A DNA stretch of 51,082 nucleotides from Macrostomum lignano (lineage: Eukaryota): assembly GCA_002269645.1 (NCBI GenBank), contig NIVC01004307.1, forward strand, positions 1 to 51,082, read 5' to 3'. The notes below the pieces were generated by a model. That model was not told the origin of the DNA. It searched no databases and was given only the letters and a program-made list of their open reading frames with translations. Shown piece after piece: positions 1 to 51,082 of the stretch. The translations under genes and the position numbers were made by a program. Position 1 is the first letter of the stretch. Every line of letters begins with the position of its first letter.

Positions 1-439
1 TTTGTGTACTTCAGCAATTGACACTTAACTCTGCGGCTTCACCGGCTGTAAAGTGGCCCAAATGGGTACCAGCATTTAGCGACCCCCCTTGGCGACCCCG
101 TCGTTGGACTGAACATCGACCCGTACGCAGCCTTCAGATTCGCCGCGCAATAGCTACGGCTGAGCTGCCGGTTGCGCATCTGCCCATAATACAGTAATGA
201 TAATAGTATTATTAACTTATGGCACTATTATCAAAAGACGAAACAAATCGATCTAAACTTGAAGGTACCAGGTACAGTTGTCATCGTCGTCAGCACCTTC
301 AACAGAAAGCACAAGGTGACTATGGACACCCTGTTGCTAATTTCTTTAGTTTCGCTTAACAAGCCTCGACAGTGGGCTATAAACCACAACTGCTGCATAG
401 ACATCCTCATCTAGTCTCTCAAAGATTCCGTTATCAACC

Positions 440-2600: not shown

Positions 2601-2651
<51 letters not shown>
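440..2651 (+). mobile_element. Degenerate non-LTR retrotransposon (APE endonuclease C-terminus + reverse transcriptase), 5'-truncated, with stops, frameshifts and an internal deletion near 2480-2515
   Basis: APE tail motif PT..RTG..S.PDL..W....LGSDQKPI (SDHxPI-like). RT motifs IIVPLLK, FRPVSLTS, QAGFQRGRS, LDCSRAFDRVW, FADD (2047-2058), YLG (2275-2283) and WGW..LRTVY. Probable terminal codons ...LLGALDWVPI* followed by a short 3' UTR and a (ACA)n tail. Confidence 0.92.
2601..2651 (+). repeat. (ACA)17 microsatellite, probable 3' tail of the retroelement
   Basis: 17 perfect ACA units about 25 nt after the element's probable terminal TGA. Confidence 0.9.
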
Positions 2652-2652
<1 letters not shown>

Positions 2653-3891
2653 AAACCACTCAATGGCCAGAAAGGGGAGAGAAGTCGGAGAGCGCGTCTT
2701 TAGGTCATGGCTCTAAAAATTCACACCCCATTTTGGTCCTAGGCGCCAGCACCAGTCAAAAGCCAGTCAGGGTATCTCGCCGTTCACCCTTGGTCTCGCC
2801 TGAGCGGTCCCTGTAGCTTGAGCAGCAGCACTTATAGATAACAGATGGATAACAGACAACAGATCAACAGATAATACCCTTAAATTTCCTTACCCTCACT
2901 ACCCTTAACATTTCTAAAGCTCTTAAAATTATTTTAAGCATATTTTGTCCGGCACAGAGTTATATACAAAACTGTTTCCTCATTAAAGTCGACGATTTCT
3001 CGATCCATTTTCACGTTTCCTGAATCACGAGTGCTTTGTAAACAATTTTTTAAGGAAACTGAAATCCCATATTTTCTGGTTTAAAGTTTCACGTTTTACA
3101 ATTGCGTCACAAAAAACATCTTTTTTTGTTAATCCAGCCGGGGCGACCACGTTCAGGGGATCCTGCAGTTTGCATCTTAGTGGCGAATAAAGTCTCTTTC
3201 CCTAAAAGTATTAAGTTTATTTGGGCTCTCTGTCAACTCATATTAACAGAGTTTACGATACAGGGTCCGCAAGTCTCTCAAAGAAAGAGTAAATTCGCAT
3301 TGGTAAGTTCAATCATTTTCGATCAACAAGACGCGCGGGTTTCCCGGTGCAAGGGAATCAACCTCAGAGACAATTGCTGGAAAAGTGACGCATTCAGGGT
3401 AAAGACGCGCGTGATTCTGGAATGATCGCGAATGGACTGCGAATAATATTTCGAAAATCCTCGGGCTACAATAATTCAGAGAAATCGCAGGGTTTTCGAG
3501 TGAATTCACAACAGCAGTAGGGGGCGATGCGCACCTGCCACAGATGAAAGAAATTAAACTTTATCCATGCAAGCTAAACATTTATTTATTGAATAGAAGA
3601 AATATAGCAAAGTTCCAGCAATTCAAGGTTGCAAGTCTCCCAAACATTGTAATCGGCGATTTGTTGGTTACAAAAAATCTAATTGTTATCAACGAATACG
3701 CTTGTATAAAGTACACAGGCCTTTAAGTTTTACTTCCAGACTACGAAATACATTAGAAATTTAAATTTAAGATAGAAACGGTCGATAGCATAAGTGCATT
3801 CACTACTGATAAGCTAATTGTCTCCTTGATAGAACATGGTGCAAAACCACACGGTAGCATCAAGTTATCACATTATGTAACTGCTCTTCAT

Positions 3892-6297
3892 TCATTCGTC
3901 TTTGACCAAATCAACCAACGAAGAGAAGGTTCCTTCAATGCAATTGTTCGAATACGCACTGGCTGCAAATGCACTCGTGACTATGACTGTAAGCACAGTG
4001 ACGAAGATGTTCATCGCAAAGAACACTTTGTCGGCTGACGCTACAACAATGCTGCACTCATTGGTCGTTGTTAGGGGACTTGGCGGGATGTCTCCATCAG
4101 AGCCCTCAGACTGGTCAGCTGTATCTTGTGCAGCATGCACCTGTGGCTTCCTCCCAGTCACGAGTCGGTTGAGGAACAGAGCACGGATCAGCCGGTTGCT
4201 GACGTGAGCGCTGTTGTGCTGCTTGGAGTGACACCTCAGCACGAATGCATTGCACAGCACGTTCAGAATTGTCATCACTACTGCGATGCTGAAGTACCAA
4301 GCTGCAACGGAAATTGTGACCGCATAAGCATACATGTACAGAGATTCGGTCAGCACAACGACCATCTCGCGACTCACTGATGAGCGGCACGGACTCGCTC
4401 TGTGTCGGTGTGTAGTTGCCAGCCAGCTGCAGGAACACGCACATGGACAGCACGATGGTGATGCTGAAGGAGACTCGCTCACCGCAGTCTGGAGGCATTC
4501 GGAATGCGAGTGCGGAGATGGCGAGCAGGAGGATGCTCGGAAAGAGCAGATTCGTCACGTAGAACGCCGACCGTCTCTTAAAAGAAGCAATGAAATAACA
4601 TATTTTCAGATCGATCTGTCCAAATTGTTTCATTTTAAATGCTACCAAGGCTTTTTGAACTCGCAAAACGATCTGTTCAATGCTAATTTTAGCAGCTTGA
4701 GCTGTCTCTAAAGCCATGAGCACACGGTACATGCATAAAATTGAACTAATTTGTGTTTGTATTAATTATTTGATCAAATCCAACAAAGTTGTAGTCCTAC
4801 TTGAAAGGATTTCAATTAGGAACGAGAAGCGAGGCCTTCGTACCAAACCGATCGCAAGAAATATTATTTCGAGCAAGTAAACATGCAACTCAGAAACAGT
4901 TCATCAAGGTCCTTCCTCCCTTCGGCTGTAATGGGTGGGCTAAAATGTGTATTTCTTGTCGAATTAGTATCTATAGGTTGAAAGAGGGCTGCGGGCGCCC
5001 TGGCGCAAAGCCTTCAATGACATTGTCCCACAAGCACTGAGGAAATTTTACTACTGTACACAGGCACGCACTCATACAAGCTCACCCAGGCTGTACAGCG
5101 ATTCTGACTTTCTAGTCGTCAGGCAAGGTGCATTCTCGGTGCCTTGGATGTTGGCCCTAACAGGTTTGAATGGCACGAAAAACTTCGGTTAATTTTCGTG
5201 CACAAGCCAAATGAATGTGGCCACGTACGGAATCGAACACACAGGCGTCATGTCGTGAGAGTCAACACATTTACCTCTGAGCTGCTCTGTAGCAAGTAAA
5301 TGTAATAAAAGTACGAAATAGTTCGTTAGAAAATAAAGTGCACGTGATTCTTTCTTGCCTGAAATTTAAGCACAAGAATAACCGCATCAAGTACGTCCAG
5401 TCGATGCTTTTCCAGAAAGATTCTCTTGATGCAGAATTAGTTGTTCCTTGCCAAGTATTTTTCTGTAGAAAAGTTTTGTAGAAAAAGAATCTTCAACATT
5501 GTCTCGTGCGGTAAATTTTGAGGCCGGATGCTAATGCCGCATTTCTGACTGTCAAACGGAAAATATTGCATCTCCATCTGACACTTGAACGTGACGAGCA
5601 GCACTTTCTGGTGTTGAACAAATCCATCGATAAAAATTAAAGCAGGTGGCTCGTCCAGGGTAACATCCTTTATCTCCATCCTGTAAGACATGGGGAAAAA
5701 GCATTATAAACTGCTGCGAGATGGCGGGCGACAGAAACGGGGCCTCAACTCACAAAGTGTCAACAGTAACATCAGGTATCCACAACAATTTTGAAGGAAC
5801 GGATATGTTGTGCACTCCGCCGAATGCTGAATTAGACATTGCCATCCATGATAGTCGAGAATCGAACCATTGCTACGATGAGGTTTTAAAAGCTTCTAGC
5901 AGGTTATTTTCGTAATTAAATCCACTTAGACAAAAAATCGCTCCCCCCTAATCAATGTAAGCAGGTACTGACCTTCGAAAGCATAAACTGCAGTGTAACC
6001 TCCTGAGACGCAGAGTCCTGCAAGATCGACAAAGACTAGTAATGATTAAATCGATGTCTTGAAGAGCTATAGCAAATATCAACTCACCACTTTGATGAGG
6101 CTGTATAGAAAGATCAACAAGTGTACAGTGTTTGCGGTACCGCTGTCCGGGGGCGGCCGGACCTCCCTGTTGTAATCGGTTCCGAGCTTCAGCGCCGCCA
6201 TCAGAGCAGCGTCCGGCGAAGCTTCATTGGCAGCTTCAGCGGTTGAAGCAGCGAGCAGAGCAGCGAAGGAGACGATGAGGCAACTGGTTGGAACCAT
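3892..6297 (-). pseudogene. Cys-loop ligand-gated cation channel subunit, copy A (nAChR-like, non-alpha), with an in-frame stop in exon 4
   Basis: Exons 6088-6297, 5973-6017 (45 nt), 5754-5872, 5359-5680, 4378-4576, 3892-4301; phases are consistent, 434 aa if read through. Signal peptide, WFDSRLSW, WIPD, Cys-loop CQMEMQYFPFDSQKC, M1-M4 and the GER motif before M2. TAA at 5437-5439 where copy B has GAA. The exon 4 donor is GC where B has GT. Confidence 0.85.
5218..5290 (-). mobile_element. tRNA-derived (SINE-head-like) relic in intron 4 of copy A
   Basis: A-box-like AGCTCAGAGG (5274-5283) and B-box GTTCGATTCC (5229-5238) on the minus strand. A homologous sequence lies at 10516-10580. No clean cloverleaf. 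Confidence 0.4.
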
Positions 6298-6983
6298 GAC
6301 GGACGGAGCGTGGCTGGGTGTGACAGATACAATGAGTGAAATGCTGTACGAATGGATTTTATCGCGTGTATCGACAATTGTTTATTCAGCAAGCAATGTT
6401 CTGTTGTTTGCCTTGTCAAGAAAAGCTTTATTTACTGACTCCATTAGCTTCATTGCCAAGATTGATTGATGCAATTAGCGAATTGCTGCAGTTTAGTGAA
6501 ATTAGTTGTTGACTGAAGCCCAAAATGCTGGTTAAACATGAATTATTTAGGAGATAAAAACTTGCTTCCTGAATAAGGTTTAATTGTTAACTATTTTCAG
6601 CTGAATCATGCTAAAATTTGTTGAGTTAAACAAAGTAATTCGATTGTGCATTTGCACTGTTTGATTAAGTATCCTTCTCGTGTTCGCCTCCGAAAGCAGA
6701 GAAAAATGCAATTATTGCAAAAATTAGCGCACGCAAAGCGCAAATATGAGACGCCATCAGGCTTCAGACAAAAGTGAGTAACACGTGTGCCTCATTCTGT
6801 CTAAACTTATTTGCCGAATTTTAAAGGGAATGAGTAAAAGTGCTGAATGCTGATTAAGTTGTCCTGCACCAATATTGCCAAGTATTTTATATCTGTGGGA
6901 AAACTATTCGCACAACTCAGAGACTAGGGGGGATTTTCAAGTATATTTCTGGCATTTTGCATTTTGCTTTTGCGTTGCACTTT

Positions 6984-7573
6984 GCATTTTGCGTTGCACT
7001 TAAGCTTACGGGCAAATCACTTGATCCTAAGTGGCAGGATTACACTGGCGAGGGCAGCTGCCGATCAAGTCTATGGCCCAAACCGTTGGCTGGCGGGCAA
7101 GTTACTTAAGCCTTGGGGCACTGACTTAATCCATTCATGCTCTATAAAAGCGAACTAGAAGCTAAGGCTCGCAGCAAAATGAGCTCAACATGGTCCATGT
7201 TTTGCTCATTTTGGTCATTGCCAGAACTGTGTTGCAGCTGCTGTTGTTTACTTTCCCACTTTGTTATGGCCAACCAACCACCTGCCGATGTTCCCTCATT
7301 TGCTCATACTTTGCTCATTTGCTCATATGTTGCTCATATTGACCGATTAAAATTATGCCCTTGCCACAGCACCACCCACTGGGCGGCCGATTGAAAGCGT
7401 TTCAAACTGCGATAGAGCATGAATGGATTAAGTCTGTACCCTAAGGCTAAAGTAAATTGCCCATTAGCCACCAGTTGAGACCATAGAATCGATCGGCAGC
7501 TGCCCTCGCCAGTGTAATTCTGCCACTTAGGATTAAGTGATTTGCCCGTAAGCTTAAGTGCAACGCAAAATGC
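6984..7573. mobile_element. MITE/foldback element with ~160-bp terminal inverted repeats
   Basis: 6984-7145 is the reverse complement of 7412-7573 (GCATTTTGCGTTGCACTTAAGCTTACGGGCAAATCAC...CCATTCATGCTCTAT). The interior has short TGCTCAT repeats and no coding capacity. No TSD resolved. Confidence 0.8.
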
Positions 7574-9167
7574 TATATTGTCCATGGGTGGTTAACAGAG
7601 ACAGTTACAGTTACTTAGAAGTACAACACTCGGATTCGTGACTGATTTAATAACCGTTTGGTGTACCGTATCACGCGTTGAATCAGAACCTACTGAATAA
7701 TCCTCTGAACTAGTGGATAATCTGTAAAAATTGGTGGCGTCTAGACCTATTAGCTCGTAACACGCCTTTGAAAACTTCGGCGAGATGCGACACTTCAAAG
7801 TTTCATATTTTGCTTTGGCGAACTGAGAGTGTTGATTATGTGCATGTCGGAAAAGATGCAAGTTGCACCCGTGGGTAACACGTATGTTTTAGCGGAAAGC
7901 GAAACTTCAAGAGTTTTTTCTGGTATTTTTGTTTTCCAATTGTGTAAAATAACTATCAGCTGAATAAATGATAACACATTACGAGCTTAGTGTGAGGGAG
8001 TTGCTCAGAGCCAAAGCTCAAAAAGGGGAGCTGATATCTTAGGCTACACAGCTGGCTTTCAGGGCTGATGCTGTTTTGCTTTAAACATCATTTTCCTCCA
8101 GAAACTAACAACAGTGACTCTACAAGCTCAAAGGCTACATGTAGATTATTCAAAACATTTATTCCATTCTTTATTGCCTCCCTGACGGGGGTAGAAGCTT
8201 GCTAGTTAACTTTCTGGAGTTATTTTTTCCGTTTCGTTGAAACATTTTTAGGTTTTTGTTTTACTGCATGATTTTCTACGCAAGATTTAAATCTGCTTTC
8301 GTTAGTTTTTTACTGAGAGCGCTTGTCGCGCGTTTATAGGCTGTGGACCTCTGCATGTACCGCATCCAGCATAACCAATTAGCTCGTAATTAATGGCATC
8401 GTCAAATAAACTGTCATGGATCAGTTAAATATGTATAAAACCAGTAATTGAACCTCCATTTTTTAATGTACTTATTGCGAGGCAGCATCGACGAAAAGTA
8501 TCCTGGCACACGAACATTATCAAAATTCATCACCTCAGTCCATGGGTAGCTACCGAGTCCCACAAAAAACGAAGCTATGGTGGAAAATTTCACCAAAATT
8601 AGGTACGATATATACGAGATACAAGATATCAGTCAAACTTGAATCCGTTACAAATTTTCAGATGAGCGTGACAAAGAAGTCAGTGAGAAGTGGAACTAGG
8701 CACCGCCTTCCTAGATTTTTACGAGCGTACAAGCGTACAAAAAGTACACGAAAAGTTTCACGTGCACCTTGAGTTAAATACCAAAGCCATATAATATAAA
8801 AAAAGTTTTCCACTCTCACTGACCGAATTCTGATAGGGTCGAGCTTTAATCATGCAGAGCTGCCCCAAATATAAATACTAAAGCATCTATCCATTCTTCA
8901 AATCGTTTCTCTGCCATTTATGTCTGTCAATGTATTGTCAGTGCATCGCTGAGAAACTAGCTCTTTCTCTTTCCCAAGACGCCTCCGAGATCTTGAAAGC
9001 GGAACAAGACTGATTTTTCCAGCATTAGATTTTTCCATGTCACTTTTTAGTTTTCAACGAGTGGAAAGATTATTTATTTACTTAAAATCCTGACCACCTT
9101 TGCTAGCGATGGCAAAATACGCTCGTATTTCTGCACTGGTGCTTAATAGCATTGAAACACGATAAAA

Positions 9168-11584
9168 TTACTCCTCTTTGACCAAATCAACCAACGAAGA
9201 GAAGGTTCCTTCAATGCAATTGTTCGAATACGCACTGACTGCAAATGCACTCGTGACTATGACTGTAAGCACAGTGACGAAGATGTTCATCGCAAAGAAC
9301 ACTTTGTCGGCTGACGCTACAACAATGCTGCACTCATTGGTCGTTGTTAGGGGACTTGGCGGGATGGCTCCATCAGAGCCCTCAGACTGGTCAGCTGTAT
9401 CTTGTGCAGCATGCACCTGTGGTTCCTCCCAGTCACGAGTCGGTTGAGGAACAGAGCACGGATCAGCCGGTTGCTGACGTGAGCGCTTTTGCTGCTTGGA
9501 GTGACACCTCAGCACGAATGCATTGCACAGCACGTTCAGAATTGTCATCACTACTGCGATGCTGAAGTACCAAGCTGCAACGGAAATTGTGACCGCATAA
9601 GCATACATGTACAGAGATTCGGTCAGCACAACGACCATCTCGCGACTCACTGATGAGCGGCACGGACTCGCTCTGTGTCGGTGTGTAGTTGCCAGCCAGC
9701 TGCAGGAACACGCACATGGACAGCACGATGGTGATGCTGAAGGAGACTCGCTCGCCGCAGTCTGGAGGCATTCGGAATGCGAGTGCGGAGATGGCGAGCA
9801 GGAGGATGCTCGGAAAGAGCAGGTTCGTCACGTAGAACGCCGACCGTCTCTTAAAGAAGCAATGCAATAACACTTTTAGGTTGATCTGTACTAATTGTTA
9901 CGTTCAAAAGACTACCGAGGCTTTATGAACACGTGTTCATAAACGTGTTCATAACGTGTTCATGTGTTCACGTAACATGAACGTGAACACGTGTTCATAA
10001 GCGTATGAGCCTCGGAGCAAAAGACTACCGAGGCTTTATGAACACGTGTGAAACGGTCAGTCCACGGGAAGTTTAGCATCATGCACAGGCGCTAAAGACA
10101 CAATCAAACGGTACATTGATGTAAACTATTTTTTGTTTGCATTTACGCTCGTATTGATTAGATCAAATTCAATAAATTGATAATCATACTCAAAGGTGAT
10201 TTCAATTGGGAGCAAGAAGCTCGGCTTCCGAGCAAACCGGTTAGAGAAACATGCAACGCAGAAACAGTCCATGCATCAAGGCGCAAATCCTGCTCTAATG
10301 GGTGGGCTAAAAACGCGTATTTCATGTCGAAAAAGGTTCTATAGTTTGAAAGAGGCCTGAAGTTCCGTAAGGCTTAAGCAGAGGCTAAAGAGAAAAAGTG
10401 GTATAGAATGCCTCAGCCTAGCAAATACGAGCTGAAATAATAATCATAATCTCATAGGGGTGAATCGCACGAAAGCCTTTGGATAATTTAAGTACACAAA
10501 AGCCCCAAATGAATATGGCCTCGCACGGAATCGAACCAGGGTCATGATGCGACAGTCAGACCGTTGAGCTGCTCTGCCCAGTAGCAAGTGTGTGTATAAA
10601 TATTACGAAATCATCCTTAGAAATTATCGTGCACATTTTTTTCTCTTACCTGAAATTTAAGCGCAAGAATAGCTGCATCAACTAAATCCAATCGATGCTT
10701 CTCCAGAAAGATTCTCTTGATGCAGAATTCGTTGTTCCTTGACAAGTATTTTTCCGTAGGAAAGTCTCTGTTGAAATTTGTTTTCAGCATTGTCTCGTGA
10801 GGTAAATTTTGAGACCGGATGCTAATGCCGCATTTCTGACTGTCAAACGGAAAATATTGCATCTCCATCTGACACTTGAACGTGACGAGCAGCTCTTTCT
10901 GGTGGTGAACCAATCCATTGATAAAAATTGAAACAGGCGGCTCGTCCAGTGAAAGGTCTTTTATTCCCAACCTGTAATAGATTGGGAAACATAATTAATA
11001 AATTGCTGCGAGATGGCAAAAGACAGGGGACATCAACTCACACATTGTCGAAAGTAAGACCAGCTATCCAGACCATTTTTGAGGGAACCGATATTCTCCG
11101 CACTCCGCCGAATGACGAATTTGGCTTCGTCAGCCATGATAGTCGAGAGTCGAACCATTGCTACGATGAGGTTTTAAAAGCTTATAGCTGGCTCTTTTCT
11201 TAATGAAACCAATTCGACAAAATATCGCTCTATTTTAATTGATATAAGCAAGTACTGACCTTCGAGAGAGAAAACTGCAGTGTCACCTCCTGAGACGCTG
11301 AGTCCTGCGAAGTTGACAAAGACTACTGCTGATTAAATAAATGTCTTGAAGAGCTATAGCAAATATCAACTCACCACTTTGACGAGGCTGAACAGAAAGA
11401 TGAACAAGGTCACAGTGTTTGCGGTACCGTTGTCCGGGGGCGGCCGGACCGCCCTGCTGTACTCGGTGCCGAGCTTCAGCGCCGCCATCACAGCAGCGTC
11501 CGGCGAGGCTTCATTGGCAGCTTTAGCGGTTGAAGCAGCGAGCAGAGCAGCGAAGGAGACAATGAGGCAACTGGTTGGAACCAT
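9168..11584 (-). CDS. Cys-loop ligand-gated cation channel subunit, copy B (nAChR-like, non-alpha), open ORF of 433 aa
   Basis: Exons 11375-11584, 11260-11304, 11042-11160, 10650-10971, 9651-9849, 9168-9574; all GT-AG and phase-consistent. Cys-loop CQMEMQYFPFDSQKC, PPDCGERVSFSITIVLSMCVFL (M2 with 9' Leu). Compensating -2/-1 indels in the M3-M4 loop. Confidence 0.88.
10516..10580 (-). mobile_element. tRNA-derived (SINE-head-like) relic in intron 4 of copy B
   Basis: A-box-like AGCTCAACGG (10561-10570) and B-box GGTTCGATTCC (10527-10537) on the minus strand. Same intron position as the copy A relic. Confidence 0.45.
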
Positions 11585-13175
11585 GACGGTCGGAGTTTGA
11601 CTGATTGCGACACATCATGAGGGAACAACTTGAGCCAATGGGTTTTATAGCGTGTATGAATAAACTCTAATTCAATAGCAATATTGTGTTGTTTGCATTG
11701 TCACGAAAAGCCTTATTTACTGTGTTAACAAGAGAATATGAAGAATAGAGAACTTAACACTTGGCGCTAGCGCCGCATTGCCAATAGTAGCTACACAAAG
11801 CAAGATACTAGAGTTGAGCACACTTGAGTCTTGTGCCAGGTACGTATTGATTCTCAATTTTATAAAAGGCGGGGTTGACACAGGCTTTAGCCCGGGTTGA
11901 TAAGTTTGCATAATTTGCAATTTACGCTCGTACGTTATAAAAAATTAGAAAGTGGGAGCTGAGAAAGGTGGCTTGAAGTGGAATGGGCCGGTGCACTAGG
12001 CGATTACGAGTGTGAGTAGTATGGTACAGACGTACAATGGTATAAACAAAAACTTTACTCCTCAAACCATACCAGCTTTCTTGGCATGAGCACATTCTAA
12101 TAAAAACAAAGAACCCCTCGACCGTCTTAACGTTGAAATATTAGATATCATAATACCGAGTATCTTGCACGAAAAAAATTAATCGCTACTCGTATAACGC
12201 AATGCTCAAAGAGCGAAAACGGGCATCAAAAAATTAGGTGAAGTAAACAAAGTACAGGGATGAGATAAGTATTAAACTGTTTTAACAAACAGGGTAGGTG
12301 AGTCAAAAAAACGTTGCGTTCAGTGCGAGGAAGTGAGCAAAAGGGAGAAGCGCTGAAAGATAGGAAAAACTATAATCGAACAGAGTATGCCGAAACCTCT
12401 GACTATGGCAAAAAACTTTAGCTTAACCCTAGCATGTAATAAATTGAGTCTTCACAGTAAAAGACTGTTATTACTGATCACAAGACAATACAGAGTTTAT
12501 AATACGGGGTCCGCAAGTCTATCAAACAAAGGGTAAATTCGCATTGGTGAGGCCAAGCATTTGGGATCAACTAGACGCGCGGGTTTCCCGATCAAGTGCA
12601 TCAACCTCAGAGAAAATTTCTGCAAAAGTGACGCGAATCGAAAGTAAAGTAAAAAGTAAAGTAAAAAGTAAAGGCTCGCGAATCGAGAATGGGCTACAAC
12701 TAATATTTCGAAAATACTCTGGCTTACAATAGTTCCGAGAAAATCGCAGGGTTTTCGAGTGAATTCCAAAAAGCAGTAGGTGGCGATGCGCACCCTGCCA
12801 CAGATAAAAGAATTAAAACTTTATCTATGCAAGCGAAACATCCATCCATTGAATAGAAGAAATATAATCGTAGCAAAGTTCCAGCATTCAAGATCGCAAG
12901 TCTTCCAAACACTATCCCAAGCCATATCTTCAGAATTTTGTGTAGAACCGTTTGAATTGCAATGTTAAGTTAAGTTATAGTAGTTACCGAAAGTCTGATT
13001 GCTATCATCCATTTACGCTCGTATAAAATAGACAAACCTTTCAGTTTTATTTCGAGACTACGCAAGATATTAGAAATTTAAGATGAAAACTATCGATAGC
13101 AAAAGTGCCGTCACTACTGATAAGCTCATGGTGCACAGGCGCACCGTAGCATCACGTTATCACGTTTCTCTCCAT

Positions 13176-16100
13176 TCATTTGTCTTTGACCAAATCATCC
13201 AACGAAGAGAAGGTTCCTTCAATGCAATTGTTCGAATACGCACTGACTGCAAATGCACTCGTGACTATGACTGTAATCACAGTGACGAAGATGTTCATCG
13301 CAAAGAACACTTTGTCGGCTGACGCTACAACAATGCTGCACTCATTGGTCGTTGTTAGGGGACTTGGCGGGATGTCTCCATCAGAGCCCTCAGACTGGTC
13401 AGCTGTATCTTGTGCAGCATGCACCTGTGGCTTCCTCCCAGTCACGAGTCGATTGAGGAACAGAGCACGAATCAGCCGGTTGCTGACGTGAGCGCTGTTG
13501 TGCTGCTTGGAGTGACACCTCAGCACGAATGCATTGCACAGCACGTTCAGAATTGTCATCACTACTGCAATGCTGAAGTACCAAGCTGCAACGGAAATTG
13601 TGACCGCATAAGCATACATGTACAGAGATTCGGTCAGCACAACGACCATCTCGCGACTCACTGATGAGCGGCACGGACTCGCTCTGCGTCGGCGTGTAGT
13701 TGCCAGCCAGCTGCAGGAACACGCACATGGACAGCACGATGGTGATGCTGAAAGAGACTCGCTCGCCGCAGTCTGGAGGCATTCGGAATGCGAGTGCGGA
13801 GATGGCGAGCAGGAGGATGCTCGGAAAGAGCAGATTCGTCACGTAGAACGCCACCCGTCTCTGAAAATAACCATACGCATGTGTTGGCCACGGACTACTT
13901 AATTGTCGTTTATACTTAAGTAGTCCGTGGTGTTGGCCTTCATATTTTCATATTATATTATTTATTTTTATATTGTAAATATATTGTGATATTGTGATGT
14001 CTGGTCTGTTGAGTGCTCTTGCAATTTTTCAGTTGTTTTTGCGTGCGCCCTAGGCGGCCATCCCCAGACCAGTTCTGGCTGGTTGGGGGGGGGGCGCTCT
14101 GTCCGGCTGGAGTCTTTCCCCGCAGCGGCCACTGATTGGCTGGGCTTGTGTTTTTGTGTTTTTCTTTTCTAGCCCCTATTCACTCAGATCTGCTCGGCGG
14201 GCACGCTGATTGGCTGAGAGGTCATTTCTTTTGTTTGGCGTTTCTCTCTCTCACGCTGCCTGCCCCTCTACCCTGTTAAGTGGTATACAGTGCTCAAGCC
14301 TGGCCCAGCCAGCTGGCCGCACTCCGCTCCGCGCCCCTCGCCTAGCTCTTCAAACTAAACTAGCGATACTCAAGCGAGTCGTAAAGACGGTGTCTTACTG
14401 CGAAGTCTCTTAATTTTGCATGTGTTACTCAAGCGAGCCGTGTCTAGACGGTCTCTTACTGCGAGGACTCAATTGATTGCGAGCAAATAAAGCGGTCAAG
14501 TGGTAGCGATATTCGAACGAGCCTCACAGCTTCTGGCACCGGTAGGACCCCGAGTTCATTCGCTTCTTTAGCTTTTCTGAGGCCTTGCCGTAGCAGTGGT
14601 TCCATAGCTAGAGCGTCATCACGCCTGCGACTGTGACCACTGCAGCACAGCAGCGTAGTATATTGTGTATTATTGTGGTACTGTACCGGTTACTTTATAT
14701 AGTGTGTACAACCTACAGTATCGAAACTAGAAGCACTCGAGAGTGTCACCACACCTCGAGCCGCAGCGTGAACTCTGAGTGTCACAACACCAGAGGGATC
14801 GAACTATTATCGCAGAGCGTCGCACGCCTGCTCGTATCCATAAAAGTACAGACAGAGCGTCACTACGCCTGTTATATTACGTATAATATATTTTACTCGG
14901 GACTGGGAACCCAAAACGACGCGGGTTACGACAATATTTATGAGTACTGCATGTATAGTATTTTTTGTTTTGTTTATGAATTCGAGAATTTATTTCAAGA
15001 CCCTGTCAATTATATTTAACTAAAGTTTCTACACGTACTTTCCTCTATTGGTCAAAACGTCTATGGCCCATCGCTCGGGCGCAGGCAGAGCACTGAATTT
15101 AAGACACAGTGCAGTTAAATTCAGACAAGTCACACCCACTCTGCAAACGAAGCGAGAGTCCACCAGACGAAATTAAATACAGGATTGGCGTCTCATGGTA
15201 CAGCAGAGAATTGCGGAGTCAGTTGTGGATGCCATCATGGTTGCCAAGAATGCAGCCAAGACTGGTTTGCTCAGCTTACACACTGCGCTTCCTACCCCGT
15301 TGTTTGGCCTGTGAAAACGTCTGATTGAGCACACATATGTTCTGACATTTTAGTCACAGGAACATGATTGTGAGTTTAAAGTCTGAATTGAACTGTTTAA
15401 ATTCAGTTTTAGCCATAGAAAATAGAATTTGAAAAATTTAATTTCATCTATACGAATCAATCTAGGTTTTCTATGGTTTTCTATGGTTTTATGGTCCGCT
15501 GAATGTTTAAACTCTTAGATAATATTATGATATTAGTGTCTAATAGTACTATTATTGTGCCATAGACATTTGTGTCCTTGACAAAGTGGGACAAAATTAG
15601 CGGACAGTTAATGACATTAACTGCCCGCTAATTTGAATTGAAGTAAGTTTGACTCCTACAAGCGCGCTTAAATGTAGTCTATGGCATTAAAAGGCAAGAA
15701 TAAGTGCCCAGCGGGCACAAAGGTCATGGTACACACTGCTGCACTGTGGTGACGCACTGCGACCGCTGATTATTTATAGCTCGGACATAGATTTTTTACT
15801 GTTTTACGATTCTTCTTACCTGAAACGTAAGCAGAAGTATCGGCGCAGTTAGAGCATCTATATTAAATTTCTTTAGGAAAACCTTCTTGATGCAGAATTC
15901 GTTGCTCTTTGACAAGTATCTTTCGACAGAATATTGTTTGTCAAAAAGTAAGTTGAGCGCCGTGGTGGCAGGTGTTTGAGACCGGATGCTAATGCCACAC
16001 ATCTGACTGTCGAAAGGAAACAGGTGCATTTGCATTTGACATTTGAAGGTCACGAGAAGCACAGTACTATGACGAAGCCATCCAGCTGCACTGATCGAAA

Positions 16101-19100
16101 CAGGCGACTCGTCCAGCACAACATGCTTCATCTCCACTCTGCGTTCGAAGTTCGAAGCACATTTTTACTTTGATGATGTCAACAGGTTAAAAAACTTTCG
16201 TCAACTCACACAGTGTCGACTGTAATAGCAGGTGTCCAAACCATTTGAGGCGGAACCCAGAGGGGAATGGTGGTGTCCAATGTCCGATTAGGCGTTGAAT
16301 TCCACACCAGTCGCGAATCGAACCAATGCTACAGAAATTTACAGAGAATTTCGACATGTACATGTGAATTCGTGTTGCTCGTAAAGATACGAGAATTGTT
16401 CTGATGCTAGAAGAATAGAAAATACCGAAAGACCAGCTGTACTGATAGGTCGATTTTGATCTACAATCCAGTACCTGTCAAATTTTGGCTTCATAGGACC
16501 CGCCAATTCTGATCCCCGTTAGGACTTTCTATCCTAACTCAATCGACTGGTTGTTCCACACAAAAAAATATTGTTACTTTGGGGCCAGGATCTTTAGCCG
16601 AGGTATTTTTAGTTGGATTTTTCCGTGCTTTTTAAATTTATGACCGCACCTGTCAAGTTCCTATGGTGTCTAAGAGGTCGCCCGGTGCAGAGGATTTTCA
16701 GGGTCTGAAAGCTCAGCCAATCAAAATCAAGCTAGTCATTCCGGGCTCGTCCAATCAGAAAATTCGACGCTTGGTATAACAATTTGGCCACTGGAAGGAT
16801 ATTCAAGGCCGGCCTGGCTCTCGAAAACGTTGTTTATCCGGCTGTCGGTCTGATAACCGGGTTGGATAAACCACCGTGCACATGCCCGCTCGAGACGCTG
16901 CAGCTAAGTACCCCGAAAGCGCCGGGTTAACGTCGATGAAACGTCCTCTGCAAGCTTTAGACTCCCTGGATCTAAATCATCTTAGAGCAGCAGCAGCACC
17001 CTGCTGTCTTTGTCACAGTGGATTTCTTGGCCACCAGCAGCTTGAAACTCTGATTGGCTGAGAAGCTTTCTTGACCTGCTCTATCGGAGCGCACTTGTTT
17101 TCCGTTTTCCGAGCCCTTTGCACTTTTACTTATTTGCTTTCATGTGCTGGGAAAATTGCTTATTTACTCCAACACAATTTGAAAGAAGTGTGAATTTAGG
17201 AGAAAAACCAGATCGTATCTCTCTCTTTTAAGTTCGATCTTTCTTTTTAGCCTTGCTAGCCACGATGAGTGGCTGTAATTTATTGAGTCGAATGTCACAG
17301 CGGAACGAAGCATTGCAGCCTCCTTTCACTTAACCTATCAATCAGTCAGATTCCGAAATCAGGGCAAACCATTTGCCAGGGGTGTACTTTTGTGCTGTCC
17401 CAGGCGGCAAAGCAGCAGGAAGGAATCATTCAGAGTTAGTCTAGGGATCTCTTGAAGGCTCTGATAGTTCTGCCATCAGCACCATTTACAGACCAGTGGA
17501 CAAATTTCAGGCCAAAAGCGAGCAAGTACATATACTCAGCAACAGTCGAAAGTTCCACCCTCCAAGCGAGATTAATTTTTTCCACTTTGCGAGCGACGCA
17601 ACTTAAGGCACGCGCAAAGTTTATTGCCACTTGGGGTGGCTTGGGTCTCCTTAAATGTCCAGGATGACAACGCGCCGCCACACCGAGTCGATGGTGTTAG
17701 TCAACTGAAAGAACAGCTACAGCTGCGCACTCTGCGCTGGCCTTCCCGGTCCCCCAGACATGAATCCCATCGAGCATGTCTGGGACTTCCTAAAATGCAG
17801 CATTCGAAAAGAGTTATCCACCACAGAATGTTGTGGAGCTGCGTCATACCACTGAAAAGGCTTGGCTGCAGCTTACAAAGGACGCCCCGCAGAGTCGCCG
17901 CACTTCTGCGTGCGAGGGGATCTCGCATGCGTTATTAAGCAACGCGATTCTGACTGCGTATTGCATAGAAATCAAACTGTTATTTTCCCTTCCTCGCGGC
18001 GGCCCACGAGTAGTGGCGTAACTTGAGGGTTGAATTGTGAGTGAAAAGTTGTCGCAATAAGTGATAAAATTTTCATCTCGCTGCTTGGAGAGTGAAACTT
18101 TTGACTATTGCTGAGTATAAATTGAGCATTCATTGGTGCATAGAGAATCGCCAGCACAAGAACCCCCCCCCCCTGCAAAAGCCCTCTCTGTCCCTGCATG
18201 GTCAGAGTGAGATACCGTACGACTGAGAGTTGACGAAGCTGCTTGGCGTTTATTATACTCAGCAACATTGAAAAGTCGCCACTCTATGCGCCAGTGAGCA
18301 ATATTTCTCTTGGACTATTCTGAATTAAAAGAATTCAATGAATTCAATGAGAAAACTGATCAGGGTAGCTTTAATCCGTCCAACCCTCGCACACCGCTCC
18401 CCTCACTTCATTCTTCAACTCAAGTCTGCCGCGGCGTAGCTAAGTTGCGTCACTCGCAAAGATTGAGAGACTTTACCTGCACTCTCAAAAGTGGCGACCA
18501 CAGACGGAATCTTCTGTGATGACGAATTTTCGATGTTGCTGAGTATAGATCGATACGCAGGTTAAATGCGATACAACGACTGTCGAATAATCGGGTATAG
18601 ACGATAGAGACAGAGGGTGAGTGGAAAGCACGTACATACTGTGAAATAGCAACTCCCAACCCCCGCTCTAGCGACTAGCGCATACAAGTACACTTGCAAC
18701 TCACTGCCCATTGAAGCCGCTATGACTTCGAGGTTGGCAGCAAAAAAGAAACCGGTTCGCAGGTTGTCTCAGAGCCCCTTCTAGTCGGAAACCCGATTTC
18801 CAGAGGCAGCGGGTTGGTGGCAGCGGGTTTAGTTTGATCTCTGGATTAGCTGATTTCAACTTTTTTTTCCAATTCTCCCTGCTTGTCTCTCGCTGTCCTC
18901 TCTTAGCTATCGGGGACCCAGCCGCTTGTATCTTCGCTACCTGGGGCTGACTGACCGTCTGACGGGAGAGAGAGCTCAGTGATTAATTTCTGCACTCCGA
19001 GGCCCAAGAAGTCTCCTCCGATCAAAGTGCTGAACCATCACTTAGACAAATGCGAATCGCCTCGCGATCACGAATTACGAGTGAAAATAACGTCTTAGTC

Positions 19101-19502
19101 ATGCGACTTAAAACTAAAATCTCCGGATTTACTGGTTTTAGTACACAATATTATTAAAACAAATTATTTTCTGTAGTTACCTTCCCGAGTAAAAACTGCA
19201 GTGTCACCTCCTGAGACGCAGAGTTCTGAAACATTCAGTGGATACTTGCTGTAAATTCATGTCCGGAAGAGCAACGACGAAGATCAACTCACCACTTTGG
19301 CGAGGCTGTACAGAAAGATAAACAAGTTCACAGTGTTTGCGGTGCCGTTGTCCGGGGGCGGCCGGACTGCCCTGTTGTACTCGGTGCCCAGCTTCAGTGC
19401 CGCCATCACGGCAGCGTCCTGTGAGATGTCATTGGCAACTTCAGCGGTTGAAGCAGCAAGCAGAGCAGCGAAGAAGACGACGAGGCTACTGAGAGAAATC
19501 AT
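13176..19502 (-). CDS. Cys-loop ligand-gated cation channel subunit, copy C (nAChR-like, non-alpha), open ORF of 433 aa
   Basis: Exons 19293-19502, 19181-19225, 16210-16328, 15820-16138, 13662-13860, 13176-13585; GT-AG and phase-consistent. WFDSRLVW, Cys-loop CQMQMHLFPFDSQMC, GER-M2. Introns 2 and 4 are enlarged by repeat insertions. Confidence 0.88.
13989..14912 (+). mobile_element. Unclassified interspersed repeat (LTR/TIR-like, CCAAT boxes, AATAAA at 14486-14491) in intron 4 of copy C
   Basis: Segments 13989-14237 and 14595-14912 match 19962-20569 in reverse orientation; the six-frame track shows the same spurious MTTAAQQRSILCII... peptide at both sites. Confidence 0.7.
17660..17938 (+). 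mobile_element. Tc1-family DD34E transposase 3' fragment, frameshifted and internally deleted
   Basis: QDDNAPPH...WPSRSPDMNPIEHVW after removing one extra C in the C-run near 17750. There are 34 residues between the second D and the E. Typical Tc1 C-terminus RRVAALLRARGSRMRY*. Confidence 0.85.
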
Positions 19503-19961
19503 GACGGACGGTGTCGGACTAATTGCGGCGAGCGCTAATATAAAATACGGATCAGTTTAATAGCCACCAATGAGCAGTCCTTAACCCCGCATTAATTGTG
19601 CAAACACAAATGGTCCAGTATTTGCTTTGCCTGAAATTATCGTATTTGCCCGACTCAATTAGCTGATCAGAGAGCTCGAACAGACTCAGCAGCTATGTCC
19701 TGTAGTTGAGTGAACTGACTCACAGGCTGGAGACCTCACTGTATGCTGTGCAAATATAAATCTGCTGTCGATATGCAGAGTCTCCTCTATGAATAAATGG
19801 CTTTCGGTTATCTTCTGCTAATATTAAAGTTGCTGACTCGAAATAATGTGCAGGTCTCTGAATTGTATCCAATGTCATTTTCGCTCTTCTATTGTAAAGG
19901 TTTTCCTGCTTAACTGTCCTCGTCTGCCCCAACAGATACTAAAATGACTGGATGGGCCTGG

Positions 19962-20569
19962 AGTGCCCAGTCCATGGTACAGTAGGTTATACGTAATATA
20001 GCAGGCGTAGTGACGCTCTGTCTTGTACTTATATGAATACTGTACAAGCTGGCGTGACGACGCGATAATAGGTTGCTCCGTCTGCTGTTGTGACACTCAG
20101 AGTTCACGCTGCGGCTCGAGGTGTGATGACACTCTTGAGTGCTTCTAGTTTCGATACTGTATGTTGTACACGCTATATAAAGTAACCGGTACAGTACTAC
20201 AATAATACACAATATACTTCGCTGCTGTGCTGCAGTGGTCACAGTCGCAGGCGTGATGACGCTCTAGCTATGGAACCACTACAAAAAGAAACGACCCCTC
20301 AGCCAATCAGCGTGCCCACCGAGCAGATCTGACTGAATGGGGGTTAGAGCGAAAAACACAAACTCACAGGCCCAGCTAATCAGAGGTCGCCGCGGGTAGA
20401 GAGAAAAAAAACACAAGTCCAGCCAATGAGTGGCCGCCGCGGGGAGACTCAAGCCGGGCCGGCGACCCCCTACCAGCCAGAACTGGTCCGGGGATGGTCG
20501 CTTAGGGCGCATGCAAAAACTCAAACGACCAAGTGCAAGAGCACTCAACAGGCCAGACACCACAGTATA
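19962..20569 (-). mobile_element. Second, inverted copy of the 13989-14912 repeat, lacking its central ~360 bp
   Basis: Reverse-complement match; the two segments abut at ~20280. Confidence 0.7.
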
Positions 20570-20914: not shown

Positions 20915-22321
20915 CTAGAGCTCGCCAAGGCAGTTAGTATTAGATTTTACACAGAAAATAGCAAATTGCACGACCATCATTGCGACTCCGAAGCTGACAA
21001 ACACTTTAAAGAACACCCGGTCAACGGAAGATCCGACTGTCTTCCATCCGTTGGAAGTCTGAGATGGCGATACTTTGTCATCCGCATCGGCTTCAGTGCG
21101 TGTGACTCTCCGCTCAGAGTTTTCTCCGACAACGAATCGGTTGAGGAAGAGTGCACGGACGAACCGGCTGCTGACGCTGCTCGTCTGTCTGAAGTGACAG
21201 CTGAGAACAAATGCGTTGCAGAGCACATTCAGAATTGTCATGAGCACGGCCAAGCTGAAGTACCAGGCTGGAATGTGAAGCGTGTCAAATTCGGATCAAT
21301 TTCTCCAAGGCAATGCGGTAATAGAGATACTTCGAGGTACTCACTGATGAACGGCACGGACTCGCTCTGTGTGGGCGTGTAGTTGCCAACCAGCTGCAGG
21401 AATACGCACATGGACAACACGATGGTGATGCTGAAGGAGACTCGCTCGCCGCACTCGGGAGGCAGACAGAAGGCGAGCGCGGAGGCTCCAAGGAGAAGAA
21501 TGCAGGGCAGCATCAGGTTTATCATGTAGAAAGTCGGAAGTCGCTACAATTACAAATCCTGGTCCATTATTTTATGGGTGTTAACATTATCCCACGAATT
21601 ACTCATATTACCAAATTTCGGACAAAAACTCACCTGAAATCCGACCCGGAGCACGGCTGTGTCATAGAAGCCAAACAACCAGTTTTCTAACCGGACCCAC
21701 AGAATGCAGAACTCGCTGCTCTTCATGACGTACCCAGTCGGTGTATCATTCTCATTCAGGGACTTGATGCGGATTCGAGTCGATCCTGTGACTTGCTGCA
21801 GACTCGAGAGCCTGACTAAGCAGTTTTGTTCGTCAAACGGGAACAGCTGCATTTGCATGCTGCACTTGGTGGACAGAGTCATTCCGGTGCTCTGTAGCAC
21901 AATGCCTGATGACATCACCGAAAGTATCGCGCGGCCTTTCGTGGCATCTAGGAGCTCAACTCTAGATTAAATTGTTTTAATGAAAACAATCATGACGGAC
22001 GGAGTTATAATTATACTATTTAACCAGTTTATTACTTTCTGAAAGGCGCAGCTATTTAGCTTCAAGCAGAATTGGCTCACACATCGTAAAAAGATGCGTC
22101 AGGTTGCCACAGGTACGAAGCTGGAAGGGTGATTGCGTGGATATGGTCCAGACTGGAGTTGAACTTTTCTTTCCAGGCCAAGCGACTGTCGTTCCAGTGC
22201 CGCAATAACAACATGAATTGCAGCTAGCATCAAAGCTCTGTAGGGAAACTTCAAAGACAACATTCTATGAGCTTACCAATAGCAGCCACACCTTTAGTTG
22301 TATTTCCTGATTAGTGGAATC
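20915..22321 (-). CDS. Cys-loop ligand-gated cation channel subunit, copy D (more divergent, more canonical ECD); first exon(s) not located
   Basis: Exons 22277-22321 (DSTNQEIQLKVWLLL), 22081-22199 (HWNDSRLAW...LWQPDASFYD), 21634-21961 (Cys-loop CSMQMQLFPFDEQNC), 21345-21543 (M1-M2, PPECGERVSFS), 20915-21267 (M3-M4). Intron phases match A-C. The homologous exon 3 acceptor reads GG instead of AG. Confidence 0.8.

Positions 22322-25320: not shown

Positions 25321-51082
<25,762 letters not shown>

What the first reader, a model, noticed from the sequence alone, without database searches (positions are those of the whole stretch)
3892..16328. Ligand-binding exons diverge while pore exons and even their intron are homogenised
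Seen: exon 3 peptides are 25/39 identical between A and B and 16/39 between A and C. Exon 5 (M1-M2) is 66/66 identical for A/B and 65/66 for C, and the 76-nt intron 5 is identical in A, B and C (4302-4377, 9575-9650, 13586-13661). A is mosaic: its exons 1-4 and introns are B-like, but its ~650-bp 3' flank (~3240-3891) matches C's (~12480-13175), while B's similarity stops at the stop codon. Inference: recent gene conversion or unequal crossover keeps a common assembly/pore module while the sensor domain diversifies. An identical intron argues for conversion rather than purifying selection alone.
Basis: partly seen in the sequence, partly recalled or inferred. Interest (0 to 1): 0.72.

Follow-up and report, generated by a model that had tools for sequence, protein, structure and literature searches.

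The report
Gene conversion homogenises channel-gene pore halves
Three neighbouring genes for neurotransmitter-gated ion-channel subunits in the flatworm Macrostomum lignano keep copying their pore-forming half (intron included) onto one another by gene conversion, while their ligand-binding halves stay old and different. This is a clear example of a well-known process.

Summary
The window is a Macrostomum lignano (Mlig_3_7) contig carrying four same-strand Cys-loop receptor genes of the cationic nAChR/5-HT3 type: A, B, C and a diverged D.

In A, B and C, exon 5, intron 5 and exon 6 (685 bp) differ by only 1.2-2.5%. Intron 5 differs at 0 of 76 bases and dS is 0.02-0.06. The ligand-binding exons 3-4 have dS of 0.30 (A-B) to about 1.0 (C against A or B).

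dN/dS is about 0.3-0.5 in both halves. The contrast therefore reflects age, not constraint, and nothing points to positive selection on the sensor domain.

Homeologous contigs (C1428, C272, C3794) give direct proof. A in the window carries a 590-700 bp B-type patch flanked by A-type sequence, and its homeologue lacks that patch (21 consecutive donor sites, p<=1e-5). C has a smaller patch. Trees separate the paralogues cleanly for the ligand-binding exons and collapse for the pore module.

- C's exons 1-2 lie outside the stated range.
- A is probably a pseudogene: an in-frame TAA, a GC donor, and a 5' deletion in one homeologue.
- A 110-nt M2-coding block is nearly invariant, synonymous sites included, at 40 or more loci genome-wide. 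This is unexplained.

Polishing cross-talk cannot be fully excluded without reads.

The parts
3892..6297 (-). Gene A, a probable pseudogene. Exons: 6088-6297, 5973-6017, 5754-5872, 5359-5680, 4378-4576, 3892-4301.
   Evidence: Spliced model with a 0-remainder frame. Pfam Neur_chan_LBD and Neur_chan_memb were found on paralogue C.
5437..5439 (-). In-frame TAA in exon 4 of A. B, C, E and the A copy on C272 have GAA (Glu) here.
   Evidence: The same TAA is on contig C1428.
5357..5358 (-). GC instead of GT at the donor of A's intron 4. All four A copies share it.
4009..4598 (-). Minimum extent of the B-type conversion tract in the window's A (maximum 3899-4600). It covers the end of intron 4, exon 5, intron 5 and most of exon 6.
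   Evidence: Triplet of A(window), A(C272) and B: 21 consecutive donor-type sites flanked by own-type sites, permutation p<=1e-5.
4302..4377 (-). Intron 5 of A (76 nt), identical to that of B and C.
3246..3891 (-). 3' flank of A, homologous to C's 3' flank (12490-13175) at 83.5%.
9168..11584 (-). Gene B. Exons: 11375-11584, 11260-11304, 11042-11160, 10650-10971, 9651-9849, 9168-9574. Intron 5 is 9575-9650.
   Evidence: The homeologue on C1428 is intact.
9422..9492 (-). Stretch of B exon 6 read out of frame in the window copy only. A 2-nt deletion lies between 9492 and 9491, and a 1-nt deletion between 9423 and 9422. This is either real or a consensus error.
13176..19502 (-). Gene C, intact. 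Exons: 19293-19502, 19181-19225, 16210-16328, 15820-16138, 13662-13860, 13176-13585. Intron 5 is 13586-13661.
   Evidence: It is intact on C1428 and C272 as well.
13455..13644 (-). Minimum extent of an A/B-type patch in the window's C relative to its homeologues (maximum 13247-13686).
   Evidence: 7-8 consecutive donor-type sites. p<=1e-5 over the whole region and 0.035 within the module.
12490..13175 (-). 3' flank of C, homologous to A's.
20915..22223 (-). Diverged fourth paralogue D. Exons 3-6 were recognised; exons 1-2 were not located. It is not part of the homogenised set: E5 83%, intron 5 57%, E6 76% identical to C.
13662..13773 (-). M2-coding block at the 3' end of exon 5. The same block lies at 4378-4489 (A), 9651-9762 (B) and 21345-21456 (D). 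It is near-invariant at the nucleotide level across the whole gene family.

Best explanation
The window holds a head-to-tail array of Cys-loop receptor subunit genes of the cationic nAChR/5-HT3-like branch, from Macrostomum lignano.

The 3' module of neighbours A, B and C is exon 5, intron 5 and exon 6. It encodes M1-M3, the short cytoplasmic loop and M4. This module has been overwritten repeatedly by non-reciprocal interlocus gene conversion, which is double-strand-break repair using a neighbouring paralogue as template.

Tracts start where homology starts, at the last few to about 90 nt of intron 4. They end at or just before the stop codon. Beyond those points the copies share no close sequence: intron 4 is long and loaded with repeats, and the 3' UTRs differ.

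Shown:
- The divergence contrast between the two halves.
- The conflicting trees.
- Bounded tracts that differ between homeologous subgenomes, so some events postdate the subgenome split.

Inferred:
- The direction of transfer (B-like into A, and A/B-like into C).
- That a nearly invariant M2-coding stretch supplies the perfect homology that seeds exchange.
- That the process is mechanistic rather than selected. dN/dS is the same in both modules, and A, a probable pseudogene, is converted too.
For: - Gene family: Pfam LBD and TM domains. Best solved relatives are 5-HT3A and nAChR beta2.
- Per-segment identity: E5/I5/E6 97-100%, against 64-90% upstream.
- dS for E5-E6 is 0.020, 0.049 and 0.056 (A-B, A-C, B-C). 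For E3-E4 it is 0.30, 0.91 and 1.01. Omega is 0.27-0.54 in both modules.
- Control for selection alone: paralogue E (contigs C2287/C641) has exons 93-95% identical but intron 5 only 89.5% identical plus a 4-nt indel. Distant paralogues have intron 5 at 55-68%.
- Trees: A, B, C and E are each monophyletic across homeologues for E1-I1-E2 and E3-I3-E4, with 93-100% support. For E5-I5-E6 they collapse into a comb in which A(window) does not join A(C272) and C(window) does not join C(C272).
- Difference matrix for the module: A(window)-B is 8-9 substitutions, while A(window)-A(C272) is 23.
- Bounded tracts with permutation p<=1e-5. Sawyer-type test.
- Between homeologues, C's module differs by 2.9% while its neutral flanks differ by 1.2-1.6%.
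- A second array, on C301, repeats the pattern: 94% in the TM module against 68-88% upstream.
- The three homeologous subgenomes and their 1.9-2.4% divergence are published (PMC10733133).
Against: - No reads were available. The assembly was Pilon-polished with Illumina and RNA-seq reads (PMC5730564). Reads can cross-map between copies that are 97% or more identical, so some of the last differences may have been erased artificially. The strict 0/76 in intron 5 may be affected in this way.
- 36% of the assembly length lies in chimeric scaffolds, so 'homeologue' assignments are per segment, not per contig.
- The C patch is only marginal when tested within the module alone (p=0.035).
- A(C272) is itself odd. 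A 125-nt divergent patch around intron 5 sits between exons that are about 99% B-like. Its history needs more than one event, and the direction of transfer is not proven.
Confidence: 0.85

Rival explanations
1. Assembly or polishing artefact. The pore modules truly differ more, and consensus or polishing with cross-mapped short reads made them look alike.
For: Pilon polishing used Bowtie2-mapped Illumina reads and STAR-mapped RNA-seq reads. The family has 40 or more near-identical M2 blocks. Single-base indels in B(C272), A(C3794) and B(window) look like PacBio consensus errors, which shows imperfect base accuracy.
Against: - Cross-mapping needs copies that are already about 95% identical or more. 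It cannot turn 17-35% divergence into 0-3%.
- Copy-specific differences survive: 8-20 per pair.
- A distinct A version with a 17%-diverged intron 5 was resolved on two contigs.
- The pattern repeats on three or four independently assembled contigs.
- The older ML2-based UniProt model P0001 has the same B pore sequence.
- A 685-bp repeat lies well inside PacBio read length.
Confidence: 0.05
2. One recent unequal crossover or partial duplication copied a single 3' half behind different 5' halves, producing hybrid genes. Under this view there was no repeated conversion.
For: Tandem same-strand arrays are prone to unequal crossover. A shares its 3' flank with C but its 5' half with B and E. This intermediate-age (83.5%) mosaic could be an old crossover product.
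Against: - The recent tract in A is internal. It has A-type sequence on both sides: 22 and then 203 own-type sites downstream.
- Tract ends differ between pairs: 4663/9933 for A-B, 13866/9855 for B-C and 4589/13873 for A-C.
- Tracts differ between homeologues.
- The 3' flanks of A and B are unrelated right after the stop codon.
Confidence: 0.07
3. Purifying selection alone keeps the pore exons, and an element in the intron, identical.
For: M2 and its surroundings are highly conserved at the protein level in all paralogues. Exons of the unconverted paralogue E are still 93-95% identical.
Against: - dS drops 5-50 fold while omega stays unchanged.
- Intron 5 is 0/76 among A, B and C but 83-89% in A(C272) and E, and 55-68% in distant paralogues.
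- No Rfam hit and no RNA structure signal.
- A is probably non-functional yet homogenised.
Confidence: 0.02

Closest known systems
Interlocus (non-allelic) gene conversion and concerted evolution of tandem duplicates. Textbook cases are the globins, opsins, RHD/RHCE and CYP21. An ion-channel example is the Nav1.1/1.3 paralogues and the Nav1.4 exon 26a/b duplicates of newts (PMC8476164).
   Same: Short bounded tracts between same-chromosome paralogues. Synonymous and intron sites are homogenised, segment trees conflict, and the tracts are detectable by Sawyer/GENECONV-type run tests.
   Different: Here the tract repeatedly covers one whole structural module (M1-M4) of a pentameric receptor and spares the ligand-binding module. 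Three homeologous subgenomes let single events be seen as present or absent. My literature searches found no report for Cys-loop receptor arrays.
CHRNA7/CHRFAM7A partial duplication in humans. Exons 5-10 of an nAChR gene were copied and fused to FAM7A. This rests on established knowledge; a PDB entry naming it appeared.
   Same: Two loci share near-identical pore-forming exons of a cationic Cys-loop subunit, while their 5' parts differ.
   Different: That case is a single segmental duplication that made a hybrid gene lacking a proper ligand-binding domain. Here each gene has its own complete, old ligand-binding domain, and the shared part is a bounded patch renewed by conversion.
Lineage-specific expansions of nAChR-like Cys-loop subunits in lophotrochozoans and flatworms (background knowledge, not tested here).
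   Same: Many tandem paralogues with divergent extracellular domains and a conserved cation-type M2 (GER...).
   Different: Such expansions are usually described as birth-and-death evolution. Module-restricted homogenisation is not part of that picture.

Membership tests
Cys-loop (pentameric) ligand-gated ion channel, cationic nAChR/5-HT3 branch | Neur_chan_LBD plus Neur_chan_memb domain pair | tested here: met
   PF02931 at 1.3e-27 and PF02932 at 1.3e-21, both above the gathering cut-offs.
Cys-loop (pentameric) ligand-gated ion channel, cationic nAChR/5-HT3 branch | Cys-x13-Cys loop in the extracellular domain | tested here: met
   CQMEMQYFPFDSQKC in A and B, and CQMQMHLFPFDSQMC in C, in the translations.
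Cys-loop (pentameric) ligand-gated ion channel, cationic nAChR/5-HT3 branch | Cation-type M2 mouth (Gly-Glu-Lys/Arg before M2) and closest similarity to cationic members | tested here: met
   PPDCGERVSFSITIVL aligns with PPDSGERVSFKITLLL of 5-HT3A. The top PDB matches are 5-HT3A (2.8e-35) and nAChR beta2.
Cys-loop (pentameric) ligand-gated ion channel, cationic nAChR/5-HT3 branch | Alpha-type vicinal Cys pair in loop C | tested here: not met
   There is only a single Cys (NEFCIK) in the loop C region. These are non-alpha-like subunits and the ligand is unknown.
Interlocus gene conversion / concerted evolution | Neutral sites (synonymous and intron) far less diverged inside the tract than outside | tested here: met
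   dS 0.02-0.06 against 0.30-1.0, and intron 5 at 0/76 against introns 1 and 3 at 11-35%.
Interlocus gene conversion / concerted evolution | Conflicting phylogenies between adjacent segments | tested here: met
Interlocus gene conversion / concerted evolution | Tract bounded on both sides by recipient-type sequence (non-crossover) | tested here: met
   A(window): own-type, then 21 donor-type, then own-type sites, p<=1e-5.
Interlocus gene conversion / concerted evolution | Confirmation on single molecules (long reads or clones) that the mosaic exists in vivo | not testable with these tools
   No read data were reachable. The only support is agreement between contigs C4307 and C1428 and the ML2-derived protein P0001.
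Unequal-crossover hybrid gene | A single breakpoint, with everything downstream including the flank of donor type | tested here: not met
   The recent tracts end at or before the stop codon, and the flanks remain recipient-type. This stays possible only for the older A/C 3' flank similarity.

The most novel reading that the evidence does not exclude
The local homogenisation may be the visible tip of a family-wide process. The 110-nt M2-coding block at the end of exon 5 is 89-100% identical at 40 or more loci on 14 or more contigs. Third-codon identity is 0.91 there, against 0.58 in the M1 half of the same exon, and even an A-ending Arg codon is invariant.

This would mean one of two things. 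Short-tract ectopic conversion may keep a single 'pore cassette' across dozens of dispersed receptor genes, with GC3 of 0.92 as the footprint of biased conversion. Alternatively, an unknown nucleotide-level function may overlap the pore helix. In either case the block would be the homology seed for the longer tracts between neighbours.
Probability: 0.3. Interest if true: 0.65.

Novelty: new member of a known kind. Interest (0 to 1): 0.42.

Why it matters
- For annotation and phylogenetics of expanded receptor families, trees built from full-length sequences or from the conserved transmembrane half will be wrong for these genes. Only the ligand-binding exons track orthology.
- The case shows how conversion can uncouple the evolutionary ages of two structural modules of one protein. 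A pseudogene can be kept 'fresh' in one half, and it could feed lesions back into working neighbours.
- The three subgenomes of M. lignano act as natural replicates in which single conversion events can be dated. This makes the species a usable system for measuring conversion rates after polyploidisation.
- The mechanism itself is standard.

Tried and rejected
- RNA structure in the M2 block: folding energy is not better than shuffles (z=+0.79).
- Rfam scan of the module: no hit at E<=1.
- HKA-like contrast of homeologue against paralogue divergence for the M1 half and the M2 block: counts were too small (5/144 against 4/295) and the result is inconclusive.
- Search for a donor of C's old ligand-binding core: apart from C's own homeologues, the nearest copies in the genome are A, B and E at 54-57% amino-acid identity.
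- GC3 as a signature specific to the recent tract: rejected, because unconverted E has the same GC3 profile.
- Calling B a pseudogene from its indels: rejected as unsafe. The indels differ between homeologous contigs, C1428 is intact, and some indels in other copies sit in homopolymers.
- Pfam on transposon-like ORFs in C's introns and on the low-complexity ORF at 25324-26472: nothing above threshold.
- Literature searches for conversion in Cys-loop arrays: no relevant paper.
- My first use of the fetched loci failed because they are not strand-oriented. I redid the analysis.
Full report
**What is there.**
The region encodes genes on the minus strand with short GT-AG introns. A self-comparison of the window shows three related units, plus a fourth weaker one at about 19.2-21.5 kb. 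I rebuilt six-exon models for three genes:
- A: 3892-6297.
- B: 9168-11584.
- C: 13176-19502.

A fourth, diverged paralogue D sits at about 20915-22223.

The proteins carry Neur_chan_LBD and Neur_chan_memb domains and a Cys-x13-Cys loop. Their GER-type M2 mouth aligns with that of 5-HT3A. The best solved relatives are 5-HT3A and nAChR beta2. Loop C has no vicinal Cys pair, so these are non-alpha-like cationic Cys-loop subunits with an unknown ligand.

**Source.**
The closest database proteins are all named Macrostomum lignano. The genome behind the window has 764.4 Mb in 5269 contigs, which matches assembly Mlig_3_7 (764,424,962 bp, 5270 scaffolds; PMC5730564). That assembly is known to hold three homeologous subgenomes with 1.9-2.4% SNP divergence, and many of its scaffolds are chimeric (PMC10733133).

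Consistent with this, the whole array recurs on other contigs:
- C1428: 99.6% identical over A and about 97% over B and C.
- C272: 96-98%.
- C3794: the A part only.

A further paralogue, E, lies on C2287/C641. I transferred the exon models to all of these copies.

**Check of the observation.**
- Exon 3 peptides: 25/39 (A/B) and 16/39 (A/C).
- Exon 5: 66/66 and 65/66.
- Intron 5: identical at the three stated coordinate pairs.
- A's 3' flank aligns with C's, and A/B similarity ends at the stop codon.

**Size of the contrast.**
Per-segment identity:

| Segment | A-B | C against A or B |
|---|---|---|
| E1 to E4 and introns 1, 3 | 79-90% | 64-88% |
| E5, I5, E6 | 98.3-100% | 97-100% |

Synonymous divergence:

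| Segment | A-B | A-C | B-C |
|---|---|---|---|
| E3-E4 | 0.30 | 0.91 | 1.01 |
| E5-E6 | 0.020 | 0.049 | 0.056 |

For E1-E2, dS is 0.14-0.27 across the pairs.

dN/dS is 0.27-0.54 in every partition. The pore half is therefore not under visibly stronger constraint. It is simply much younger.

The gene is in fact a three-part mosaic. C's signal-peptide exons and the A-C 3' flank (83.5%) are of intermediate age. C's ligand-binding core is very old and has no closer relative anywhere in the genome.

**What selection alone looks like.**
Paralogue E keeps its exons 93-95% identical, but its intron 5 is 89.5% identical with a 4-nt indel. Ten more distant paralogues keep E5 at 83-90% while intron 5 falls to 55-68%, which is essentially unaligned. 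The 0/76 in A, B and C is therefore not constraint.

**Direct evidence for conversion from the homeologues.**
In the 685-bp module, A(window) is identical to A(C1428). It differs from B copies at 8-9 sites, but from its own homeologue A(C272), which equals A(C3794), at 23 sites. Thirteen of those 23 lie in intron 5.

I used A(C272) as the 'own' reference and the three B copies as 'donor'. On that basis A(window) is own-type through intron 4. It then shows 21 consecutive donor-type sites from 21 nt upstream of exon 5 to position 568 of the module (window 4598 to 4009). After that it is own-type again for over 200 sites in the 3' flank. Permutation gives p<=1e-5, or 4e-5 within the alignable core. 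This is a bounded non-crossover patch of 590-700 bp that arose after the subgenomes separated.

C(window) carries a smaller A/B-type patch (13644-13455) that C(C1428) and C(C272) lack. For this patch p<=1e-5 over the region and 0.035 within the module.

Maximum-likelihood trees make the same point. For E1-I1-E2 and E3-I3-E4, each paralogue is monophyletic over its homeologues with 93-100% support and long separating branches. For E5-I5-E6, A, B and C collapse into a comb in which homeologues no longer pair.

A Sawyer-type run test on A, B, C and E puts the longest concordant runs inside E5-I5-E6: p=0.0006, 0.0001 and 0.003.

Between homeologues, C's module differs by 2.8-2.9%, although its intronic and 3' flanks differ by only 1.2-1.6%. 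That is expected if conversion injects differences.

**Why the tracts stop where they do.**
Upstream of exon 5, C shares nothing with A or B, and its intron 4 is 1959 nt with repeat insertions. A and B share only about 90 nt there. Downstream, B's flank is unrelated to A's and C's from the stop codon on, although it matches E's for about 80 nt. Heteroduplex formation needs homology, so exon-bounded tracts follow without invoking selection. This step is inference.

**State of the genes.**
A has an in-frame TAA (5437-5439) where every other copy has GAA. The same TAA is on C1428. All A copies have GC instead of GT at the donor of intron 4. On C272, window 5859-6830 is deleted, which removes exons 1-2 and the start of exon 3. 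The UniProt model P0001, from the earlier ML2 assembly, joins an intact B to exactly that truncated A.

A is therefore most likely a pseudogene with independent lesions in different subgenomes. Its pore half was still converted and reads open. This argues that the homogenisation is mechanistic, not maintained for function.

B in the window has a -2/-1 indel pair that puts 23 codons after M3 out of frame. B on C1428 is intact, and B on C272 has two other single-base deletions. Such indels may be PacBio consensus errors, so I do not call B a pseudogene. C and E are intact everywhere.

**Artefact question.**
Cross-mapping could erase the last few differences between copies that are already 97% or more alike. 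The strict identity of intron 5 should therefore be checked on long reads.

Cross-mapping cannot, however, create similarity from 17-35% divergence. Copy-specific differences survive, a divergent A version was resolved on two contigs, and the pattern recurs on independently assembled contigs. I put the artefact reading at about 5%.

**An additional, unexplained layer.**
The last 109-112 nt of exon 5 run from the Cys codon of PPDCGER to the exon end and encode M2 and the M2-M3 linker. This block is 89-100% identical at 40 scored places (93 candidates) on at least 14 contigs. Some distant paralogues (97%) match C better here than E does (94%).

Across nine distinct distant paralogues, third-codon identity to C is 0.91 in this block against 0.58 in the M1 half of the same exon. 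Conservation stops at the intron. GC3 is 0.92, but the A-ending CGA codon is invariant too. No RNA structure or Rfam signal was found, and a homeologue-against-paralogue contrast was inconclusive.

Three explanations remain open:
- Family-wide short-tract conversion.
- Selection on the nucleotide sequence.
- Polishing cross-talk among 40 or more near-identical blocks.

Whatever its cause, the block offers a long, near-perfect homology seed for exchange between otherwise diverged paralogues. A second array on contig C301 shows the same module pattern: 94% in the pore module against 68-88% upstream. The behaviour therefore seems general for neighbouring members of this family.

**Comparison with what is known, and verdict.**
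Interlocus gene conversion between tandem duplicates is textbook. It has been shown for ion-channel paralogues, for example the newt sodium channels (PMC8476164). I found no report for Cys-loop receptor arrays, but that reflects a gap in the searchable literature, not a new principle.

It is a new member of a known kind. Its added value is the clean module boundary, the dating of events across three subgenomes, the converted pseudogene, and the family-wide M2 block that deserves a read-level check.

Noticed in passing
window 13662-13773 (also 4378-4489, 9651-9762, 21345-21456): The M2-coding block of about 110 nt is near-invariant at the nucleotide level, synonymous sites included, at 40 or more loci on 14 or more contigs. 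The M1 half of the same exon and the adjacent intron are diverged. The cause is unknown: family-wide conversion, nucleotide-level selection or polishing cross-talk.
   Followed up: partly
window 5859-6830 against contig C272 (about 120831-120835): A 972-bp stretch is missing in the C272 homeologue. It holds A's promoter region, exons 1-2 and the first 14 nt of exon 3. The UniProt model P0001 fuses B to this truncated A.
   Followed up: yes
window 1-7789 against 7852-19766, compared with contig C1428: The window is 99.6% identical to C1428 over gene A but only about 94-97% identical over B and C. C1428's C copy nearly equals that of C272. One of these contigs is a recombinant or an assembly chimera between subgenomes.
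   Followed up: partly
window 13989-14910 and 19963-20568: A repeat of about 0.6-0.9 kb in C's intron 4 recurs inverted (73-89% identity) between C and D. It is probably a transposable element and was not classified.
   Followed up: no
window 17576-17938 (+), inside C's intron 2: An open frame carries a 'QDDNAPPH ... WPSRSP' motif reminiscent of a Tc1/mariner transposase remnant. Pfam gave no hit, so this rests on memory of the motif only.
   Followed up: partly
window 6984-7145 and 7412-7573: A 162-bp inverted repeat (89.5% identity) lies in the A-B intergenic region. It looks like a MITE.
   Followed up: no
window 26842-50692: The right half of the window is dense in tandem repeats: (ATCA)n at 36499-37359, (CTGT)n at 43689-44583, a 9-mer array at 41296-41677, a 30-mer array at 38404-38745, a 56-mer array at 29990-30207, a 43-mer array at 50180-50616, and 10/20/40-mer arrays at 33792-34291 and 35321-35857 in inverted orientation.
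   Followed up: partly
window 25324-26472 (-): A 383-codon open frame is rich in Ala, Pro, Gln and Asp and has no Pfam match. It may be a low-complexity exon of a neighbouring gene.
   Followed up: partly
L013/L015 (contig C301:381413-385060): A second tandem pair of the same receptor family repeats the pattern: the pore module is 94% identical while upstream ligand-binding segments are 68-88% identical.
   Followed up: partly
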